Shown: positions 44,501 to 57,144 of the stretch, piece by piece | How positions within the stretch are numbered: position 1 is the first letter of the stretch | How the letters are laid out: every line of letters starts with the position of its first letter | Source: Mantamonas sphyraenae STR306 | Lineage: Eukaryota; Protista; CRuMs | DNA: 64,000 bases | Reading direction: 5' to 3' | NCBI GenBank assembly: GCA_026936335.1 | Contig: JAPMXV010000035.1 | Location: 310,001-374,000, forward strand | Translations under genes and position numbers: made by a program | Notes under the pieces: model-generated | Database searches by the model: none | What the model saw: the letters and a program-made list of their open reading frames with translations, nothing else | What the model was told of the DNA's origin: nothing

Positions 44501-45342
44501 CGTACATCTCGCGGTCGGCCTCTGCGGCGCGCTCCTCTTCCATCCTTCGCTCCTGCTCCTCGAGGTCGGCGACGTCGAGGCGGCCGACGACGAGGGAGGT
44601 CTCACTGGCTTCGGTGTCAAAGATTTCTGTGTACTTTGGCATTCGGCGGTTCTGTGGGTGTGTGGCAGGGAGGCGAGGCGGGATAACGGTACGGGGAAGG
44701 AAAAACGGCTGGGGTGAGCGGCAAGCGGGAGGGTGTAGGGGGTTGTGGAGAGTGCGGTTGGAGGATATGGTGTGGGAGGAGTAGGGGTGTTGTCGGGGCG
44801 AGGGGGTGGAGGGAGTGTGTGCAGCGTACCTTGATGCGGTTCTTGAGTTGCTGTGCCTTTTTGCGGCGGTCGGCTTGGAGCTTTTCGATGGGACCCTTGA
44901 GGACCTGGACAAAGTCTTCGGGGTCTGAGTCTGGGTGGGCATGTGCGGATGGAGAGGGCCTGCGTCTGGAGGGGCGGCCAGGGGAGGACTGGTACTGTGC
45001 AAGGAGCCTGCGGGTGTCTGAGTTGATGTCGTCGTGGTCGGCGGGGTGGTCGTTGTCGGCAGACGGGAGGGAGGAGGAAGAGGAGGGTTGGGGAGGGTTG
45101 GAGGGAGAGGAGGAGTGGGAAGAGGATGACGAGGAGGAGGAGGTGTGTGGTGTGGTTGTGGAGGAGCTGGGGAGGGCTGTGGGGAGGTCTGGCATGCGAG
45201 GGACGGTGGGGAGCGAAGTGGTGTTGAGGGTCTGCATCTCGACGTGCTCGCGGGTATTTGTGTGATCCTCCTGCCTGTCGGTGCCAGACTCTCGCACAGT
45301 GGTGGGGCGACCGTGTGCGGGGAGGACTGGAAGCTGTTGCAT
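41595..45342 (-). CDS. OFCC1-like multi-pass membrane protein
   Basis: Exons 45342-44830 and 44651-41595. Coiled coil; W..TPQP..LRAAKDK..G.YVL.VS.FDRLGG; AWGAFP; about 5 TM helices ending [11 protein letters not shown]. Family call is from memory. Confidence 0.65.
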
Positions 45343-45421
45343 GCGAGGAGTCGGAGTAGGTTTTTTGGGGTTGGCGAGGGAGCGGGGGCGGAGGCACGGA
45401 AAGAAGGGAGTCGTTGGGCAG

Positions 45422-46373
45422 ATGGGCAAGTCGGGCAAAGCAAACCATCGGGGCAAGGGTAAAGGTGGAGGCCAGGGAGGGTTTTCAGGGAAGGGCAAGG
45501 GTCAACGGAAGGGAGGGCCGCGTACGAATCACGGGTCGAGCACGACGGCCGGGACGGTGGTGGAGAACACGGGGCTGAGGTTAGCGATGTGGGACTTTGG
45601 GCAATGTGACGCGAAGCGATGCACGGGGCGGAAACTGTGCCGACAGGGTCTGTTGTACGAGCTGAAGCTGTCGCAGAGGTTCGGCGGACTGATTCTCTCG
45701 CCAGACGGGGAGCAGGCGGTGTCGCCTGCGGACCGGGAGCTTGTGGAGGGATCTGGTGTGGCGGTGGTGGATTGTTCGTGGGCAAAGATTGCGGATATTC
45801 CGTGGGGGAAGATGCAAGGAGGGCAGCCACGGTTGTGTGAGTTGGAGGGGGGGATGGGATTAGAGGGGGGGGGGGGGTGGAGGGTGACTGACACGGTTGC
45901 ACGGTGCAGTGCCGTTCTTGGTGGCAGCGAATCCAGTGAATTATGGAAAGCCGATGCGGTTGACGTGTGCAGAGGCGGTGGCTGCGACGCTGTATATTAC
46001 AGGGTTTCCAGAGGCGGCAGACAAGCTGATGAATCAGTTTAAGTGGGGGCCTGTGTTTTATCAGCTGAACGAGAGGTTGTTGGAGCAGTATGCAGGGTGT
46101 GCGGACAGTGGAGAGGTGGTTGCAGTGCAGATGGAGTACTTGGAGGAGGTTCGGGAGGAGCAGGAGAGGAGGCAGAGGGAGAAGGAGGAGAGGTTGGCTG
46201 GTGGGGAGGATGGAGGGATTGAGGAGGATGAGATGGGGAGTTTGAATCATCGGATGGGGAGGTTGAAGTGGAGGGGAGGGGAAGAGGGAGGAGGGGGTGG
46301 AGGGGGAGGAAGGGGAGGAAGGGGAGGAAGGGGAGGAAGAGGGGAGGAGGAAGAGGGGGAGAGAGGAGGATGA
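45422..46373 (+). CDS. TSR3: 18S rRNA aminocarboxypropyltransferase Tsr3
   Basis: [43 protein letters not shown]. Intron 45837-45909. The low-complexity tail may be frameshifted, with the true stop at 46471-46473. Confidence 0.92.
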
Positions 46374-46498: not shown

Positions 46499-46822
46499 CT
46501 ACTCGTGAGGGAGGGCGTGGAGAAGGATGGAGGCGAGGGAGCCGTGGGTGTGCTGGAGGATGAGGGCGTCAGAGGGGCGTGTGACGCCAAGGGCGGCGAG
46601 TGCGGCGTCGGCTTGGTCGTCGGGAGTGTGGTGGCGGGAGACGGCGTGCCAGAAGGAGGTTTCCATGGCGTCTGCGTGTTGGGAGACGAGGCGGAGTTGG
46701 CGGAGGGCCGTGGTCGGGGCAGACGGGGAGTTTGCTCGAAATCGGACGGGGATCAGGATTTGGTCTGCGTCGAACTGGGAGGCAAGGATGTGCTGGAGAG
46801 AGGTGCAGGAGTAGGAGTCCAT
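46499..46822 (-). CDS. Hypothetical 107 aa protein
   Basis: ATG-initiated ORF that fills the gap, with the C-ending codon style of neighbouring minus-strand genes. No motif recognised. Confidence 0.35.
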   Translation of the reverse strand: MDSYSCTSLQHILASQFDADQILIPVRFRANSPSAPTTALRQLRLVSQHADAMETSFWHAVSRHHTPDDQADAALAALGVTRPSDALILQHTHGSLASILLHALPHE

Positions 46823-46863: not shown

Positions 46864-48336
46864 TCAGATCGGGGGCGGCTGGACTTGGGTGCCGCGGGGC
46901 GCGGTGGGGACGACGGGCTGGAGAAAGTCGTGGGGAATGTGGCCGGTCTGGGCAACGCGAGCATATTCTTCGGGGAGGGTGTTGAGCTCTGCGTAGTGTG
47001 CGGAGCGAATGCGGCGGACCTTCCAGCGGGTGTAGGCCCAGACAAGGACGGCGGCGATGATGGCGACGCCGATGAGGGAGTACTGCCACCAGGGGAAGGC
47101 CTCGAAGGATTGCTCGCGGGTAAAGACGGCAAAGGCGCCAGAGCCGGTGTCGACGACGACATTGAGGTTCTGGAGCGGGGTGCCGAGGGAGACGGTGGTG
47201 GTGTACTGGAGCTGGTCGGCGTTTGTGACGGGGACGGTGCTGGTGGAGCCAGAGGCGGTGTCGAGGGCGAGGACGTGGAGGGTGCGGGTGCGATCGGGGC
47301 GAGGGACACGGGTGCGTGTGAGGGTGTGGGTTGCAGGAGCTGTGGCAAGGGAGTAGTTGTAGTTGCGCTGCGCAAGGAGGAGCTCGGGGGCGTCGTCGTG
47401 GGTGAGGTTGTGGACGACGAGGACGTTGCGCATAAAGACGTCGCCGAGGAGAAAGACGTCTGGCATCTGAGCGTCGGTGCCGATGCACTGGCGCCATTCG
47501 TTGACGTCGGGCTTGTCTGCGTTGAGGATAAAGTCGTCAAAGGGGACGCGGAACTCCCAGCCGTTGATCTTGACATAGACGTCCGGGCGTGTGGTTGTGA
47601 GGTCGGGCCAGGTGCTGAGGGCAGACTCGAACCAGTTGAAGGCACTCTGCGGGTTGAGTTTGGTCTTGCCCGGGAGGAGGAGGCAGGAGGTGCCGGAGTC
47701 GACGACGGCGGTGGTGCCGGACGCAAAGGTGAAGGCCTTGGAAATGTGTGCGTCGGCAAGTCTGAGGGATTGGACCTGGATGCTGTAGGAGCGAATGGCA
47801 CAGTCTGTGGAGCCGTCTGGGCCCTTGCACTCCTTTTGGAGCGGGGCGGAAACGAGGGGCGGTGTGAAACTGGCCGGATCGTAGCCGCCGAGGTCGAGGT
47901 GGCCACCGTGCTTGGAAAGGAGGAGAGAAAACAGGCGGCGGGGCATGAGGTTGGGTGGAGTGGGGTCGAGAATGGAGGGAGGGCGGCGTGCGCGGCCAGA
48001 GAGGGTGTCGAGGAGGGAGGGAAGGGCTTTGGAAACGGCCGGGCTGAGGCCGAGGATGCCGTCGACGTGGGACCAGTTGCCCGAGGAGTTTGTGATGCAG
48101 CCAAAGGCGGCGCGTGCGTGGAAGGCGCCGAGGTGGGCGTGGTCTTCGCAGAGGTAGCCCTTGAGGGAGGAGTCGTCGAGGTAGGAGAGCTGGAAGGTGG
48201 TGGTGATGTGCTGGGTCTCGCCCGGCTTGTTGTAGGTGGAGGAGGCGGTGGGGGTGTAGTAGGTGCGTGCGTGTGCGTGGAGGGAGAGGAGAGCGATGGT
48301 GAGGAGGAGGAGAAGGAGGCGAGGGGGTTGGGCCAT
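46864..48336 (-). CDS. Type I membrane pepsin-like (A1) aspartic protease, circularly permuted
   Basis: Signal peptide, then Y.P.ASSTY, DGILGL, FSLLL..LDLGGYD, VVDSGTS, LLGDVFMR, then Y...VSLGTP.Q...VVVDTGS and a TM helix. Confidence 0.88.
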   Translation of the reverse strand: MAQPPRLLLLLLTIALLSLHAHARTYYTPTASSTYNKPGETQHITTTFQLSYLDDSSLKGYLCEDHAHLGAFHARAAFGCITNSSGNWSHVDGILGLSPAVSKALPSLLDTLSGRARRPPSILDPTPPNLMPRRLFSLLLSKHGGHLDLGGYDPASFTPPLVSAPLQKECKGPDGSTDCAIRSYSIQVQSLRLADAHISKAFTFASGTTAVVDSGTSCLLLPGKTKLNPQSAFNWFESALSTWPDLTTTRPDVYVKINGWEFRVPFDDFILNADKPDVNEWRQCIGTDAQMPDVFLLGDVFMRNVLVVHNLTHDDAPELLLAQRNYNYSLATAPATHTLTRTRVPRPDRTRTLHVLALDTASGSTSTVPVTNADQLQYTTTVSLGTPLQNLNVVVDTGSGAFAVFTREQSFEAFPWWQYSLIGVAIIAAVLVWAYTRWKVRRIRSAHYAELNTLPEEYARVAQTGHIPHDFLQPVVPTAPRGTQVQPPPI

Positions 48337-48379: not shown

Positions 48380-50175
48380 ATGTCGTCGTTCTGGCAAGGG
48401 AGCAATGGACGGGGCACCGGAGAGGAGCAGGGGTCGCCGTGGGCGCTGTCGTCAGCACTGGCAAAGTTGAATGATTCGCTGGACTTTGACAAGCTGAAGG
48501 AGAAGGAGGAAGGGGTGGGGCGGAGAAAGGTGGTGGCGGAGGTGGTGGAGGAGCAGGATGAACGGGAGGAGGAGCGGGAGGAGGAGCGGGAGGAGGAGCG
48601 GGAGGAGGAAGAGGAGGAGAAGAAGAAGCGCAGGGGCAAGGAAGTGGCAAAGGTGGTGGCGACGCCGCCAGGGACGCCGTCGCTGGGGAGTCGGCGGAAG
48701 CCGCCGAGTGCGCTGTCGTCTCGGCGTGCGGACGACGAGGTGGCACGGCTAAAGGAGGCGCTGGCACAGAGGGAGGCGCAGCTGGAGGCACACATTGCAC
48801 GTGCGGCACAGTATCACGAGAGCGCGGAGCTGGAGGCACGTGCCGGGGACGTGGAGTCGCTGCGGGAAGAGTTTACGGCACGGCTGGCCGAGGCGCAGGG
48901 GAAGGTGAAGAGGCTGAGCGGACGGATCGAAACGCTAAAGGGGGAGCTGGCAGAGGCGCAAAAGGGGAAGGAGGAGGCGGAAGGGCTGCGGGCGGAGGGG
49001 GAACGGCTGGCGGAGGAGAACGGTCGGTTGCGGAGCGAGTTGAAGGAGGCGCGAGAGGAAGCAAAGGGCCTGCGGGAAAGCAACGGGGAGCTGCGAGCCA
49101 AGGTGGCGGCGATGCGAAAGACGCTGGAGGAGACGTCGTCGGCAGCAGAGTCGCAGCTGGACGCGTCGTTGGCGGACATGGAGGCGAGCATGCGTGCGCG
49201 GGAGGCGATTTCAAGGAGAATGAGGGGTCGTTCAAAGCGACGGTGCAGGAGCTTCGAGCGACGCTGCAGCGTGTGCAGGAGGGGGCGGAGAGGCGAGAGG
49301 AGGCGCTGCGGGCGGAAATCGGACAGTATCAGGAACAGGTGGAGGAAGCTGAGGGGAGGATCGCGGAACTGCAGGAAAGCGCAGGGGCGGCGGCGATACC
49401 GCTGATGAAGGAGACGGAGACGCTGCGGAAGCGAATTGGGTCGTTGAAAGAGGCTTGGGAGATGCGGGAGGGGACGCTTGTGGAACGTGCGGAGGACGCG
49501 GAGCGAGGGATGGCGGAGGCGGAGGCGAAGTGTGCGCGTGCACGTGCGGCGGCGCAGGAGGCGAAGCGGAGGTTGGTGCGTGCAGAGGGGCAAGCAAAAG
49601 AGAGGGAGGAGCGTGTGAGGGAGCTGGAGCGGCGTGTGGTGGAGCTGGAGGAGCGCGGGGTGGAGGTTGTGGAGAAGCGGGTGGAAGTGCCGGTGGAGAA
49701 GATTGTGGAGCGGGTGGTTGTGGAGCGGGTGGAGGTGCCTGTGGAAAAGATTGTGGAGCGTGTGGTGGAGGTGCCTGTGGAGGTGGAGGTTGCGGTGGAA
49801 GGGAGGGGCAAGGAGAAGGAGAGAGCGAGCGTGGGGACGCCAACGGATGGGGTGTATGTGGACGAGCAGCTGCAGAGGAGACTGGAGTTGAAGCAGGGGG
49901 AGTGCGAAAGCTTGAAGGAGAGGGTGCGTGGGCTGGAGCGGAAAATGGGGATGCTGGAGGGGGAGCTGGTGGAGGCGACGGAGAAGCTGGAAGGGCTGCA
50001 GGGCGGGTTGGGGCGGGAGGAGGCCGGGAAGTTGCAGAGGAGCTACATGGCGTGCCTGGAGCTGCTGGGAGAAAAGACAGAGGAGGTGGAGAGGCTGGAG
50101 GGGGATTTGCAGGAGGTGAAAGGGTTGTATCAGGAGGAAATTGCGGCGCTGATTGGGAGGCTGGAGGAAAGGTGA
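48380..50175 (+). CDS. TMF1: TMF1/Sgm1-like golgin coiled-coil protein, one frameshift
   Basis: Long coiled coil and C-terminal Y..CLELLGEKTEEVERL..DL..VK.LY..EI signature. Frame change at ~49211. Confidence 0.8.
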
Positions 50176-51208: not shown

Positions 51209-51312
51209 TAGGAGGGATCCGCCGTGGTCGCGTGGGCGGTTTGGTGATGGTGGAAGCAGACACCTGTAACTGAGGGTGGAGCATAGTAGAGGTGAAAAAA
51301 ACGGAAAACGCG

Positions 51313-51383
51313 ACGACTGTGGTGTAGGGGTAACATACACGCTTCCCAAGCGTGTGCCTCGGGTTCGATTCCCGGCTGTCGTA
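51313..51383 (+). tRNA. tRNA-Gly(CCC)
   Basis: Acceptor ACGACTG/CTGTCGT (one T-T mismatch), anticodon arm CACGC-TTCCCAA-GCGTG, GGTTCGATTCC, downstream T8. Confidence 0.88.
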
Positions 51384-51420
51384 CTTTTTTTTGCGCGCGA
51401 GTGGAGTTGAGAGCAGGATG

Positions 51421-54400
51421 CATCCAGGCATCCACAGTGTGGGTAAAGGGCAGGAGGATGGTGTGTGGGCGGTTGGTATGGTGCCAGGCCACCCATGGAG
51501 CCGAGGCCGGGGCAGGCGACAAAACGGCGAAAACCAGGAACGCAGGGTTCATAAAGGTTTCAGCGCTAAAGAACTCGACGAATTGGAGGCAAAGACGTGC
51601 GGCCACCGCAGCCAGCAACGGCGTGCCCAGCACGCACCCAGGCATGCACAGTGTGGGTAAAGGGCAGGAGGATGGTGTGTGGGTGGTTGGTATGGTGCCA
51701 GACCACCTGTGGGGCCGAGGCCGGGGCAGGCGACAAAACGGCGAAAACCAGGAACGCAGGGTTCAACCAGGTTTTAGACCTGGAAAAATGGACGAATTGG
51801 AGCCAAGAACGTTTTTCACTTGGGCGGCCACTCCAGCCAGCAACGGCGTATCCAGCACGCACCCAGGCATGCACAGTGTGGGTAAAGGGCAGGAGGATGG
51901 TGTGTGGGTGGTTGGTATGGTGCCAGACCACCTGTGGGGCCGAGGCCGGGGCAGGCGACAAAACGGCGAAAACCAGGAACGCAGGGTTCAACCATCTTAG
52001 ACCTGGAAACAAGGGACGAATTGGAGCGAAGAACGTTTTTCACTTGCGTGCGGCCGCTCCAGCCAGCAACGGCGTATCCAGCACGCACCCAGGCATGCAC
52101 AGTGTGGGTAAAGGGCAAGAGGATGGTGTGTGGGTGGTTGGTATGGTGCCAGGCCACCCATGGAGCCGAGGCCGGGGCAGGCGACAAAACGGCGAAAGCC
52201 AGGAACGCAGGGTTCAACCAGGTTTTAGACCTGGAGAAATGGACGAATTGGAGCCAAGAACGATTTTCACTTGGGCGGCCGCTCCAGCCAGCAACGGCGC
52301 ACGCAACACGCACCCAGGCATGCACAGTGTGGGTAAAGGGCAGGAGGATGGTGTGTGGGTGGTTGGGTATGGTGCCAGGCCACCCATGGAGCCGAGGCCG
52401 GGGCAGGCGACAAAACGGCGAAAGCCAGGAACGCAGGGTTCAACCAGGTTTTAGACCTGGAGAAATGGACGAATTGGAGCCAAGAACGATTTTCACTTGG
52501 GCGGCCGCTCCAGCCAGCAACGGCGTACCCAGCACGCACCCAGGCATGCACAGTGTGGGTAAAGGGCAGGAGGATGGTGTGTGGGCGGTTGGTATGGTGC
52601 CAGGCCACCTGTGGAGCCGAGGCAGGGGCAGGCGACAAAACGGCGAAAACGGTTCATCGAGCTTGACGATCTTGGCCAAACAAGGGTGGGTCGGCGAATT
52701 GGAGCCAAATGCGTGCGGCCGCTCCAGCCAGCAACGGCGCACGCAACACGCACCCAGGCATGCACAGTGTGGGTAAAGGGCAGGAGGATGGTGTGTGGGT
52801 GGTTGGGTATGGTGCCAGGCCACCCATGGAGCCGAGGCCGGGGCAGGCGACAAAACGGCGAAAGCCAGGAACGCAGGGTTCAACCAGGTTTTAGTCCTGG
52901 AGAAATGGACGAATTGGAGCCGGAGACGTTTTTCACTTGGGCGGCCGCTCCAGCCAGCAACGGCGTACCCAGCACGCACCCAGGCATGCACAGTGTGGGT
53001 AAAGGGCAGGAGGATGGTGTGTGGGCGGTTGGTATGGTGCCAGGCCACCTGTGGAGCCGAGGCAGGGGCAGGCGACAAAACGGCGAAAACGGTTCATCGA
53101 GCTTGACGATCTTGGCCAAACAAGGGTGGGTCGGCGAATTGGAGCCAAATGCGTGCGGCCGCTCCAGCCAGCAACGGCGAGCCCAGCACGCACCCAGGCA
53201 TGCACAGTGTGGGTAAAGGGCAAGAGGATGGTGTGTGGGCGGTTGGTATGGTGCTAGGCGACCTGTGGAGCCGAGGCCGGGGCAGGCGACAAAACGGCGA
53301 AAACCAGGAACGCAGGGTTCAAGTTGGTTTTAGTCCTGGAGAAATGGACGAATTGGAGCCAAATGCGTGCGGCCGCCGCAGCCAGCAACGGCGTATCCAG
53401 CACGCACCCAGGCATGCACAGTGTGGGTAAAGGGCAGGAGGATGGTGTGTGGGCGGTTGGTATGGTGCCAGGCGACCTGTGGAGCCGAGGCCGGGGCAGG
53501 CGACAAAACGGCGAAAACGGTTCATCGAGCTTGACGATCTTGGCCAAAACAAGGGTGGGTCGGCGAATTGGAGCCAAATGCGTGCGGCCGCCGCAGCCAG
53601 CAACGGCGAACCCAGCACGCACCCAGGCATGCACAGCGTGGGTAAAGGGCAAGAGGATGGTGTGTGGGCGGTTGGTATGGTGCTAGGCGACCTGTGGAGC
53701 CGAGGCCGGGGCAGGCGACAAAACGGCGAAAACGGTTCATCGAGCTTGACGATCTTGGCCAAAACAAGGGTGGGTCGGCGAATTGGAGCCAAATGCGTGC
53801 GGCCGCCGCAGCCAGCAACGGCGAACCCAGCACGCACCCAGGCATGCACAGTGTGGGTAAAGGGCAAGAGGATGGTGTGTGGGTGGTTGGTATGGTGCTA
53901 GGCGACCTGTGGAGCCGAGGCCGGGGCAGGCGACAAAACGGCGAAAACGGTTCATCGAGCTTGACGATCTTGGCCAAACAAGGGTGGGTCGGCGAATTGG
54001 AGCCAAATGCGTGCGGCCGCCGCAGCCAGCAACGGCGTACCCAGCACGCACCCAGGCATGCACAGCGTGGGTAAAGGGCAAGAGGATGGTGTGTGGGCGG
54101 TTGGTATGGTGCTAGGCGACCTGTGGAGCCGAGGCCGGGGCAGGCGACAAAACGGCGAAAACCAGGAACGCAGGGTTCAAGTTGGTTTTAGTCCTGGAGA
54201 AATGGACGAATTGGAGCCAAATGCGTGCGGCCGCCGCAGCCAGCAACGGCGTATCCAGCACGCACCAGGCATGCACAGCGTGGGTAAAGGGCAAGAGGAT
54301 GGTGTGTGGGCGGTTGGTATGGTGCCAGGCGACCTGTGGAGCCGAGGCCGGGGCAGGCGACAAAACGGCGAAAACGGTTCATCGAGCTTGACGATCTTGG

Positions 54401-57144
54401 CCAAAACAAGGGTGGGTCGGCGAATTGGAGCCAAATGCGTGCGGCCGCCGCAGCCAGCAACGGCGAACCCAGCACGCACCCAGGCATGCACAGTGTGGGT
54501 AAAGGGCAAGAGGATGGTGTGTGGGCGGTTGGTATGGTGCTAGGCGACCTATGGAGCCGAGGCCGGGGCAGGCGACAAAACGGCGAAAACCAGGAACGCA
54601 GGGTTGAAAAGGGTTTTAATCCTGGAGAAATGGACGAATTGGAGCCGGAGACGTTTTTCACTTGGGCGGCCGCTCCAGCCAGCAACGGCGAACCCAGCAC
54701 GCACCCAGGCATGCACAGTGTGGGTAAAGGGCAGGAGGATGGTGTGTGGGCGGTTGGTATGGTGCCAGGCGACCTATGGAGCCGAGGCCGGGGCAGGCGA
54801 CAAAACGGCGAAAACCAGGAACGCAGGGTTCAACCAGGTTTTAGACCTGGAAAAATGGACGAATTGGAGCCGGAGACGTTTTTCACTTGGGCGGCCGCCG
54901 CAGCCAGCAACGGCGCACGCAACACGCACCCAGGCATGCACAGTGTGGGTAAAGGGCAAGAGGATGGTGTGTGGGTGGTTGGTATGGTGCCAGGCGACCC
55001 GTGGGGCCGAGGCCGGGGCAGGCGACAAAACGGCGAAAACCAGGAACGCAGGGTTCAAATTAGGTTTTACTCCTGGAGAAATGGACGAATTGGAGCCGGA
55101 GACGTTTTTCACTTGGGCGGCCGCCGCAGCCAGCAACAGCGTACCCAGCACGCACCCAGGCATGCACAGTGTGGGTAAAGGGCAAGAGGATGGTGTGTGG
55201 GCGGTTGGTATGGTGCCAGGCGACCCGTGGGGCCGAGGCCGGGGCAGGCGACAAAACGGCGAAAACGGTTCATCGAGCTTGACGATCTTGGCCAAACAAG
55301 GGTGGGTCGGCGAATTGGAGCCAAATGCGTGCGGCCGCCGCAGCCAGCAACGGCGTACCCAGCACGCACCCAGGCATGCACAGTGTGGGTAAAGGGCAAG
55401 AGGATGGTGTGTGGGCGGTTGGTATGGTGCCAGGCCACCTGTGGGGCCGAGGCCGGGGCAGGCGACAAAACGGCGAAAACCAGGAACGCAGGGTTCAAAT
55501 TAGGTTTTACTCCTGGAGAAATGGACGAATTGGAGCCGGAGACGTTTTTCACTTGGGCGGCCGCCGCAGCCAGCAACGGCGCACGCAACACGCACCCAGG
55601 CATGCACAGTGTGGGTAAAGGGCAAGAGGATGGTGTGTGGGTGGTTGGTATGGTGCCAGGCGACCTGTGGGGCCGAGGCCGGGGCAGGCGACAAAACGGC
55701 GAAAACCAGGAACGCAGGGTTCAAATGGGCTTCAGTGCTAGAGAACTGGACGAATTGGAGCCAGATACGTTTTTCACTTGGGCGGCCGCCGCAGCCAGCA
55801 ACGGCGTATCCAGCACGCACCCAGGCATGCACAGCGTGGGTAAAGGGCAGGAGGATGGTGTGTGGGCGGTTGGTATGGTGCCAGGCGACCTGTGGGGCCG
55901 AGGCCGGGGCAGGCGACAAAACGGCGAAAACGGTTCATCGAGCTTGACGATCTTGGCCAAACAAGGGTGGGTCGGCGAATTGGAGCCAAATGCGTGCGGC
56001 CGCCGCAGCCAGCAACGGCGTACCCAGCACGCACCCAGGCATGCACAGTGTGGGTAAAGGGCAAGAGGATGGTGTGTGGGCGGTTGGTATGGTGCCAGGC
56101 CACCTGTGGAGCCGAGGCCGGGGCAGGCGACAAAACGGCGAAAACCAGGAACGCAGGGTTCAAAAAGGATTTAGTGCCAAAGCACTGGACGAATTGGAGC
56201 TAAAGACGTTTTTCACTTGGGCTGCCGCTCCAGCCAGCAACGGCGTACCCAGCACGCACCCAGGCATGCACAGTGTGGGTAAAGGGCAAGAGGATGGTGT
56301 GTGGGCGGTTGGTATGTTGCCAGGCCACCCGTGGGGCCGAGGCCGGGGCAGGCGACAAAACGGCGAAAACCAGGAACGCAGGGTTCAAATTAGGTTTTAC
56401 TCCTGGAGAAATGGACGAATTGGAGCCGGAGACGTTTTTCACTTGGGCGGCCGCCGCAGCCAGCAACAGCGTACCCAGCACGCACCCAGGCATGCACAGT
56501 GTGGGTAAAGGGCAAGAGGATGGTGTGTGGGCGGTTGGTATGGTGCCAGGCGACCCGTGGGGCCGAGGCCGGGGCAGGCGACAAAACGGCGAAAACGGTT
56601 CATCGAGCTTGACGATCTTGGCCAAACAAGGGTGGGTCGGCGAATTGGAGCCAAATGCGTGCGGCCGCCGCAGCCAGCAACGGCGTACCCAGCACGCACC
56701 CAGGCATGCACAGTGTGGGTAAAGGGCAAGAGGATGGTGTGTGGGCGGTTGGTATGGTGCCAGGCCACCCGTGGGGCCGAGGCCGGGGCAGGCGACAAAA
56801 CGGCGAAAACCAGGAACGCAGGGTTCAAATTAGGTTTTAGTCCTGGAGAAATGGACGAATTGGAGCCGGAGACGTTTTTCACTTGGGCGGCCGCCGCAGC
56901 CAGCAACAGCGTACCCAGCACGCACCCAGGCATGCACAGTGTGGGTAAAGGGCAAGAGGATGGTGTGTGGGCGGTTGGTATGGTGCCAGGCGACCTGTGG
57001 AGCCGAGGCCGGGGCAGGCGACAAAACGGCGAAAACGGTTCATCGAGCTTGACGATCTTGGCCAAACAAGGGTGGGTCGGCGAATTGGAGCCAAATGCGT
57101 GCGGCCGCCGCAGCCAGCAACGGCGTACCCAGCACGCACCCAGG
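51421..57144. repeat. Tandem array of 26 units of ~213-226 bp, with two unit types
   Basis: Counted 26 CAGGCAT(G/C)CACAG anchors. A constant core alternates with cassette A (CAGGAACGCAGGGTT..., 16 units) or B (GGTTCATCGAGCTTGACGATC..., 10 units). Confidence 0.97.

What the first reader, a model, noticed from the sequence alone, without database searches (positions are those of the whole stretch)
46864..48336. Circularly permuted, membrane-anchored pepsin-family protease
Established: A1 proteases run Y-x-x-x-I-x-I-G-T-P...DTGS, then F.P..SST, the flap Tyr, DGILGL, D(T/S)GT and ILGDVF. Seen: straight after the signal peptide this chain starts at YYTPTASSTY and runs through DGILGL, VVDSGTS (~47690-47700) and LLGDVFMR. 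Only then comes the normally N-terminal segment VPVTNADQLQYTTTVSLGTPLQNLNVVVDTGSGAFAV (~47140-47235), followed by a TM helix and a cytosolic tail with YAEL/YARV motifs. The ORF is single and uninterrupted, with both catalytic Asp intact. Inference: this is a clean circular permutation. The Arg-rich linker (TLTRTRVPRPDRTR) could be an internalised propeptide whose cleavage gives a two-chain enzyme tethered by its small catalytic fragment. I know of no described example but could not search.
Basis: partly seen in the sequence, partly recalled or inferred. Interest (0 to 1): 0.88.

Follow-up and report, generated by a model that had tools for sequence, protein, structure and literature searches.

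The report
Circularly permuted pepsin family in protists
This gene encodes a pepsin-type protein-cutting enzyme whose usual front end, carrying one of its two catalytic residues, has moved to the back and is tied to a membrane anchor; the same rearranged design occurs in many distantly related single-celled eukaryotes and was not found in the literature searched.

Summary
The 490-aa ORF (46864-48336, minus strand) is a circularly permuted A1 pepsin: residues 24-310 match pepsin 53-314, residues 369-401 match pepsin 5-37. AlphaFold gives pTM 0.88 with the displaced Asp32 fragment at pLDDT 91-97. The genome matches Mantamonas sphyraenae in size and contig count. It holds three permuted paralogues; the scan noted the other two before (s1-590483, s1-596406). 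About 50 distinct clusters at 50% identity show the same order, including genomes or transcriptomes of Mantamonas plastica, Ancoracysta, Andalucia, Cochliopodium and several cryptophytes. One origin is not rejected (p-AU 0.84). Both catalytic Asp are almost invariant; 49 of 59 members have a C-terminal membrane anchor. The linker carries the basic pro-strand motif of pepsin zymogens (27 of 67, 4.2 by chance), and AlphaFold orders that strand in the Guillardia member, which supports an internal prosegment family-wide; in this protein the motif is degenerate. Activity, cleavage and location are untested, and no RNA of this gene was seen. No description found in six targeted searches of open literature. 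New variant of a known family, possibly very old.

The parts
48268..48336 (-). Signal peptide, aa 1-23 (cleavage after A-H-A inferred by eye; no predictor available)
   Evidence: Hydrophobic run aa 7-19; homologues also begin with a hydrophobic leader
47347..48267 (-). Pepsin core, aa 24-330 = pepsin about 51-326: rest of the N-lobe (flap Tyr52, GILG) and the whole C-lobe
   Evidence: VIA-align: model 2-306 on pepsin 51-326, Z 23, rmsd 2.4-2.5; phmmer
48181..48183 (-). Flap tyrosine, Tyr52 (pepsin Tyr75)
   Evidence: Tyr in 37, Phe in 14 of 52 rows
47686..47700 (-). DSGTS motif, Asp213 (pepsin Asp215), followed by a family-specific Cys218
   Evidence: Asp in 66 of 66 rows, Cys in 62 of 67
47437..47451 (-). 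LLGDV psi-loop motif (pepsin Gly302)
   Evidence: Gly in 67 of 67 rows
47242..47346 (-). Linker aa 331-365, Arg-rich; putative internal prosegment with a degenerate pro-strand near aa 336-344
   Evidence: Disordered in the model; family motif enrichment; by eye TLTRTRV lines up with ELKRHKV in the M. plastica orthologue
47119..47241 (-). Displaced mature N-terminal fragment, aa 366-406 = pepsin about 2-42, with catalytic Asp396 (pepsin Asp32) at 47151-47149; contains no Cys
   Evidence: phmmer; four strands at pLDDT 91-97; Asp in 65 of 66 rows
47032..47091 (-). Transmembrane helix, about aa 416-435
   Evidence: Hydropathy 1.7 over 19 residues, basic residues follow; 49 of 59 members have such a segment after the fragment
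46864..47031 (-). Cytosolic tail with two YxxPhi motifs (YAEL, YARV) and the stop codon
   Evidence: Sequence; YxxPhi in 19 of 49 family tails against 9.1 in shuffles

Best explanation
A type I membrane aspartic protease of a circularly permuted A1 subfamily, made as a zymogen with the layout signal - core (pepsin 51-326) - prosegment - N-fragment (pepsin 1-42, Asp32) - membrane helix - tail. SHOWN by computation: the order of parts, conservation of both Asp and both psi-loop glycines, a confidently folded bilobed model that includes the displaced fragment, and a family that can be one clade. INFERRED: the pro-strand in the linker occupies the interdomain sheet as in pepsinogen; in an acidic compartment (endosome, lysosome or food vacuole, suggested by YxxPhi) the linker is cut and a two-chain enzyme results, in which a large chain with Asp215 is held without a disulfide on a small membrane-anchored chain with Asp32. 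INFERRED origin: tandem duplication of a pre-pro-enzyme gene, then loss of the first copy's pro plus N-fragment and of the second copy's core; the junction core - pro - N-fragment is what such a tandem leaves. Split odds: permutation real 0.98, active protease 0.85, linker works as a cleaved prosegment in this protein 0.6-0.65.
For: Swapped matches. pTM 0.88 in two independent members; with about 50 disordered linker residues a pTM of 0.88 is hard to reach unless the 41-residue fragment is docked (inference). 57 of 166 collected proteins permuted, canonical enzymes appear only from about E 1e-9. Asp 66/66 and 65/66. Motif [KRH]-hydrophobic-x-hydrophobic-x-[KRH]: 27/67 linkers against 4.2 shuffled, maximum 12 in 1000; 34/63 canonical prosegments against 6.1. 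A profile from canonical pro-strands scores 10 of 27 spread-out linkers at p < 0.05. In the Guillardia model the motif (model 302-308) is an ordered strand at pLDDT about 86 while the mature N-terminal strand is not formed, the zymogen-like state; in this protein's model the mature strand is formed and the linker is loose. Constrained one-clade tree is 24 log units better, p-AU 0.84.
Against: No activity, cleavage or localisation data. Model coordinates could not be read, so the Asp-Asp distance was not measured. This protein's own linker does not score as a pro-strand (z 0.0) and Pfam A1_Propeptide hits no member. Trp39 is replaced by Ala/Gly family-wide and the Cys45-Cys50 loop is lost. Motif counts are inflated by relatedness. 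No RNA run of this gene was found.
Confidence: 0.6

Rival explanations
1. Permuted, active, but single-chain: in this protein the linker is a relic of the prosegment that only bridges the old C- and N-termini (or helps folding, as the BACE propart does) and need not be cut.
For: Linker disordered and mature N-strand in place in the model; no pro-strand score in this protein; linker length varies from about 17 to over 140 residues; propart-less A1 enzymes and non-inhibitory proparts are known (PMC3116508).
Against: Family-wide retention of a pro-strand motif at a pepsinogen-like distance from the mature start; ordered strand in the Guillardia model; basic character kept between the two Mantamonas orthologues.
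Confidence: 0.28
2. A catalytically dead or weak pepsin-fold binding protein or receptor.
For: Trp39 lost throughout; Tyr75 is Phe in 14 of 52; one small subclade has D-S-M at Asp215.
Against: Both Asp nearly invariant at about 25-30% overall identity; all five A1 hallmarks of PMC4079213 present; Trp39 is described there as not absolutely conserved.
Confidence: 0.08
3. Assembly error or two truncated tandem genes read as one.
Against: Single frame with GC3 0.83-0.89 in core, fragment and tail; three DNA runs hold 84-96% of the words (not independent of the assembly); two more permuted paralogues on other contigs; same order in transcriptome-derived proteins of other species and in the Guillardia genome.
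Confidence: 0.01

Closest known systems
Pepsin family A1, subfamily A1A (pepsinogen, cathepsin D, rhizopuspepsin; Pfam PF00026)
   Same: Bilobed fold (Z 23-24, rmsd 2.3-2.5 over about 254 residues); all hallmark motifs; signal peptide; pro-strand motif.
   Different: Chain opened in the 42-51 loop and rejoined so that pepsin 1-42 follows 326; prosegment internal; Trp39 and the Cys45-Cys50 loop absent; invariant Cys after the Asp215 motif.
BACE1/2 and plasmepsin V (membrane-anchored A1 enzymes)
   Same: Type I topology: lumenal A1 domain, one C-terminal helix, short tail (PMC3116508 for the comparison).
   Different: Their anchor follows the C-lobe in normal order; here it follows the strand after Asp32. 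No close kinship was shown.
Type III metacaspases of algae (PMC3734836)
   Same: A natural protease subfamily with swapped subunit order, found in protists including Guillardia theta.
   Different: Unrelated cysteine-protease fold; swap of whole p10/p20 subunits, whereas here the cut lies inside one lobe.
Swaposin (plant-specific insert of phytepsins; PMC3320104)
   Same: The circular permutation classically linked with aspartic proteases.
   Different: It is the saposin insert that is permuted, not the protease.
Engineered sin-pro-pep pepsinogen (Lin, Tang and co-workers, 1995; from memory, paper not held)
   Same: As recalled, an artificial permutant with an internal propeptide that activated to a two-chain enzyme.
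   Different: Artificial, cut between the lobes, soluble. Unverified recollection; a lead only.

Membership tests
Peptidase A1 (hallmarks of PMC4079213) | D32-[TS]-G | tested here: met
   DTG at 396-398; 65 of 66 rows
Peptidase A1 | Tyr75 in the flap | tested here: met
   Tyr52; Tyr 37, Phe 14 of 52
Peptidase A1 | hydrophobic-hydrophobic-Gly122 and -Gly302 | tested here: met
   ILG 94-96, LLG 296-298; Gly 58/59 and 67/67
Peptidase A1 | D215-[TS]-G | tested here: met
   DSG at 213-215; Asp 66 of 66
Peptidase A1 | Two-lobed pepsin fold; Pfam Asp above cut-off | tested here: met
   pTM 0.88, Z 23-24, 105 bits against 19.9
Peptidase A1 | The two Asp juxtaposed in the active site | tested here: inconclusive
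   Fragment confidently modelled (pLDDT 91-97) but coordinates not readable, distance not measured
Canonical A1 architecture | Motif order D32, Y75, G122, D215, G302 with an N-terminal propart | tested here: not met
   Order is Y75, G122, D215, G302, D32
Peptidase A1 | Trp39 (common, not absolute) | tested here: not met
   Ala 35, Gly 23 of 66; Trp once
A1 zymogens | Prosegment with basic-hydrophobic first strand | tested here: inconclusive
   Enriched in family linkers, ordered in one model; not significant in this protein; Pfam A1_Propeptide not hit
A1B (nepenthesin type) | Cys-rich insert between Trp39 and Tyr75 | tested here: not met
   That region is where the chain is opened; no Cys before residue 63 or in the fragment
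Peptidase A1 | Acid proteolysis, pepstatin inhibition, zymogen processing | not testable with these tools
   Needs bench work

The most novel reading that the evidence does not exclude
An undescribed A1 subfamily as old as, or nearly as old as, the last eukaryotic common ancestor, kept in flagellates of several supergroups and missing from the animal, fungal and plant proteins seen here, in which an internal prosegment is excised to give a two-chain protease whose Asp32 sits on a small membrane-anchored chain.
Probability: 0.35. Interest if true: 0.9.

Novelty: new variant of a known kind. Interest (0 to 1): 0.8.

Why it matters
Pepsin-like proteases are among the most studied enzymes, and surveys define them by a fixed order of motifs. 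A natural permutant kept across CRuMs, Provora, Discoba, Cryptista and probably Amoebozoa shows that the fold tolerates being opened next to the catalytic Asp32 and that zymogen control may work from inside the chain. Pipelines that require aligned hallmarks would drop these proteins as defective; public entries seen here are labelled only 'Peptidase A1 domain' or hypothetical. It gives a direct test of the duplication route to permutation and of how the pepsin prosegment acts, and a candidate ancient enzyme of protist digestion or membrane-protein processing. Guillardia theta offers a culturable model.

Tried and rejected
No RNA run was offered. Longer 643-aa start at 48795 rejected (antisense to a coiled-coil gene, no protease motif; homologues start at the signal peptide). 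Prokaryotic or viral origin: one hit among GTDB genomes is an interrupted gene on a contig in a bacterial MAG, best read as eukaryotic contamination; none in viral contigs; both scans used narrow patterns and are weak tests; two earlier tries failed on a too-diverse alignment. No permuted pepsin in PDB by sequence or fold or among the nearest Atlas models; the Atlas feature search was uninformative. 'Core-only' hits look like truncated gene calls: P0003 ends at the pro-strand and its relative P0208 has the full permuted form. Tandem double-A1 proteins (P0099, P0209) are in normal order and were not shown to be intermediates. Free trees put the long branch P0082 (and once P0081) outside the clade, but the constrained tree was better. 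Literature searches found no permuted pepsin; subscription journals and MEROPS were not searchable. The third paralogue was read exon by exon and not joined.

Full report
OBSERVATION. The minus strand from 48336 to 46864 is one open frame of 490 codons. Pfam Asp covers model 40-307 with the first part and 1-32 with the later part. The gene is single-copy as DNA, and GC3 is 0.84 in the core, 0.89 in the displaced fragment and 0.83 in the tail, as expected of one coding unit.

HOST. The assembly has 25,061,354 bases in 78 contigs, matching the FALCON assembly of Mantamonas sphyraenae (25.06 Mb, 78 contigs, mean 321,299.41; PMC10492846). The best homologue is from Mantamonas plastica. The word search of that genome paper found no mention of proteases or peptidases.

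NOT AN ARTEFACT. Three DNA runs of one study hold 84-96% of the words, and no RNA run was listed. The stronger evidence is comparative. The same genome has a second intronless permuted gene on C53 and a third, intron-containing one on C57, next to two ordinary A1 genes. Of 166 proteins collected, 57 have the GTP..DTGS fragment after the GILG core; the top-ranked hits are all permuted or partial, and ordinary enzymes enter only near E 1e-9. Named members: Mantamonas plastica, Ancoracysta twista, Andalucia godoyi, Cochliopodium minus, Guillardia theta (three clusters), Rhodomonas, Hanusia, Teleaulax. Several are transcriptome-derived, so relatives are expressed in permuted form; Guillardia's is in its genome. 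Placing these in CRuMs, Provora, Discoba, Amoebozoa and Cryptista rests on PMC10492846 for Mantamonas and on my own knowledge for the rest. Most other members are unnamed metagenome or metatranscriptome proteins. No permuted protein with an animal, fungal or land-plant name appeared, but that is not a proof of absence.

STRUCTURE. AlphaFold2 on residues 20-414 gives mean pLDDT 88.3 and pTM 0.88; the displaced fragment forms four strands at pLDDT 91-97, and only the linker is below 50. Model residues 2-306 superpose on pepsin 51-326 (Z 23, rmsd 2.4-2.5), leaving the place of pepsin 1-50 to the fragment. I could not read coordinates, so juxtaposition of the two Asp is inferred from pTM and pLDDT. 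The new termini fall in the surface loop at pepsin 42-51, whose disulfide is lost. No solved structure has this order.

CATALYTIC FEATURES. All five hallmarks used by PMC4079213 are present. Across the alignment Asp215 is in 66/66 rows, Asp32 in 65/66, Gly122 in 58/59, Gly302 in 67/67; Tyr75 is Tyr 37 or Phe 14; Trp39 is Ala or Gly; a Cys five residues after Asp215 is a family mark. Such conservation at 25-30% identity argues for a working site (inference).

LINKER. A motif basic-hydrophobic-x-hydrophobic-x-basic occurs in 27 of 67 linkers (shuffle mean 4.2, maximum 12) and in 34 of 63 ordinary prosegments (6.1). A profile built only from ordinary pro-strands scores 10 of 27 spread-out linkers at p < 0.05, mean z 1.5. 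Related sequences inflate these counts. In a second model, of Guillardia P0045 (pTM 0.88), this motif is an ordered strand and the mature N-terminal strand is not formed, which resembles the strand exchange between pepsinogen and pepsin (established knowledge; see also PMC11313796). In the window's protein the motif is degenerate (z 0.0) and the model shows the mature state. So a prosegment origin of the linker is well supported for the family; its cleavage here is a 60-65% inference.

ANCHOR AND PLACE. 49 of 59 members with a tail have a hydrophobic 19-mer after the fragment, often within 6-17 residues, and YxxPhi occurs in 19 of 49 tails against 9.1 shuffled. With the signal peptide and four N-glycosylation sequons this implies a lumenal enzyme sorted to endosomes, lysosomes or food vacuoles (inference).

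ORIGIN. On the shared core, permuted proteins form one side of a branch (SH-aLRT 96-97) apart from one or two long branches; forcing all 38 together improves the likelihood by 24 units, p-AU 0.84, so one origin is not rejected, though not proven, and the trees are quick and midpoint-rooted. BACE2 and a plant CDR1-like row dropped out of that tree, so the sister group is unknown. The junction core - pro - N-fragment is what permutation by duplication (PMC3320104) would leave from a tandem pre-pro-enzyme. Whether the wide spread reflects LECA age or transfers among protists is open; prey contamination is possible for single transcriptomes but not for all.

NOVELTY. Six targeted full-text searches found no permuted pepsin, and two A1 surveys do not contain the word. 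Analogues exist in other protease folds (type III metacaspases; permuted NlpC/P60). The scan's first readers noted the two paralogues; their lengths, 1305 and 2389 letters, match the C53 and C57 genes found here. Verdict: works like a membrane-anchored pepsin zymogen, belongs to A1 by fold and hallmarks but not to the canonical architecture; new variant of a known kind; interest 0.8.

Noticed in passing
window 48380-50175 (+): A TMF1-like coiled-coil gene (Pfam TMF_TATA_bd, E 7e-13) faces away from the protease; its first ATG lies only 43 bases from the protease ATG, a very tight head-to-head pair if that start is used.
   Followed up: partly
window 46499-46822 (-): A 107-codon ORF starts about 42 bases after the protease stop; no Pfam match.
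   Followed up: partly
window 45281-46373 (+): Split ORFs that look like the 18S rRNA aminocarboxypropyl transferase Tsr3 (recognised from memory, not tested).
   Followed up: no
window about 51300-56500: A long array of degenerate repeats that gives many similar spurious ORFs.
   Followed up: no
L017 (G000:C57:74364-76752, -) and L004:1054-2358 (G000:C53, -): Two further permuted paralogues, one with several introns and long acidic inserts, one intronless; both end in a membrane helix.
   Followed up: yes
L005 (G000:C16:38107-38781, -): A divergent A1 gene in normal order whose first Asp motif (MDSGS) lies upstream in another frame, probably across an intron; Cys-rich stalk and membrane helix at the end.
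   Followed up: partly
P0108, P0177, P0178: A small permuted subclade; P0108 and P0178 have D-S-M in place of D-S-G at Asp215, perhaps inactive.
   Followed up: no
P0194; L026: Permuted genes filed under an archaeal MAG (in a 90% cluster with Teleaulax) and a Verrucomicrobiaceae MAG (interrupted gene) look like eukaryotic contamination of those bins.
   Followed up: partly
P0166 contig (JGI 3300072015): A permuted member lies tail to tail with a sortilin-domain gene; a single case.
   Followed up: no
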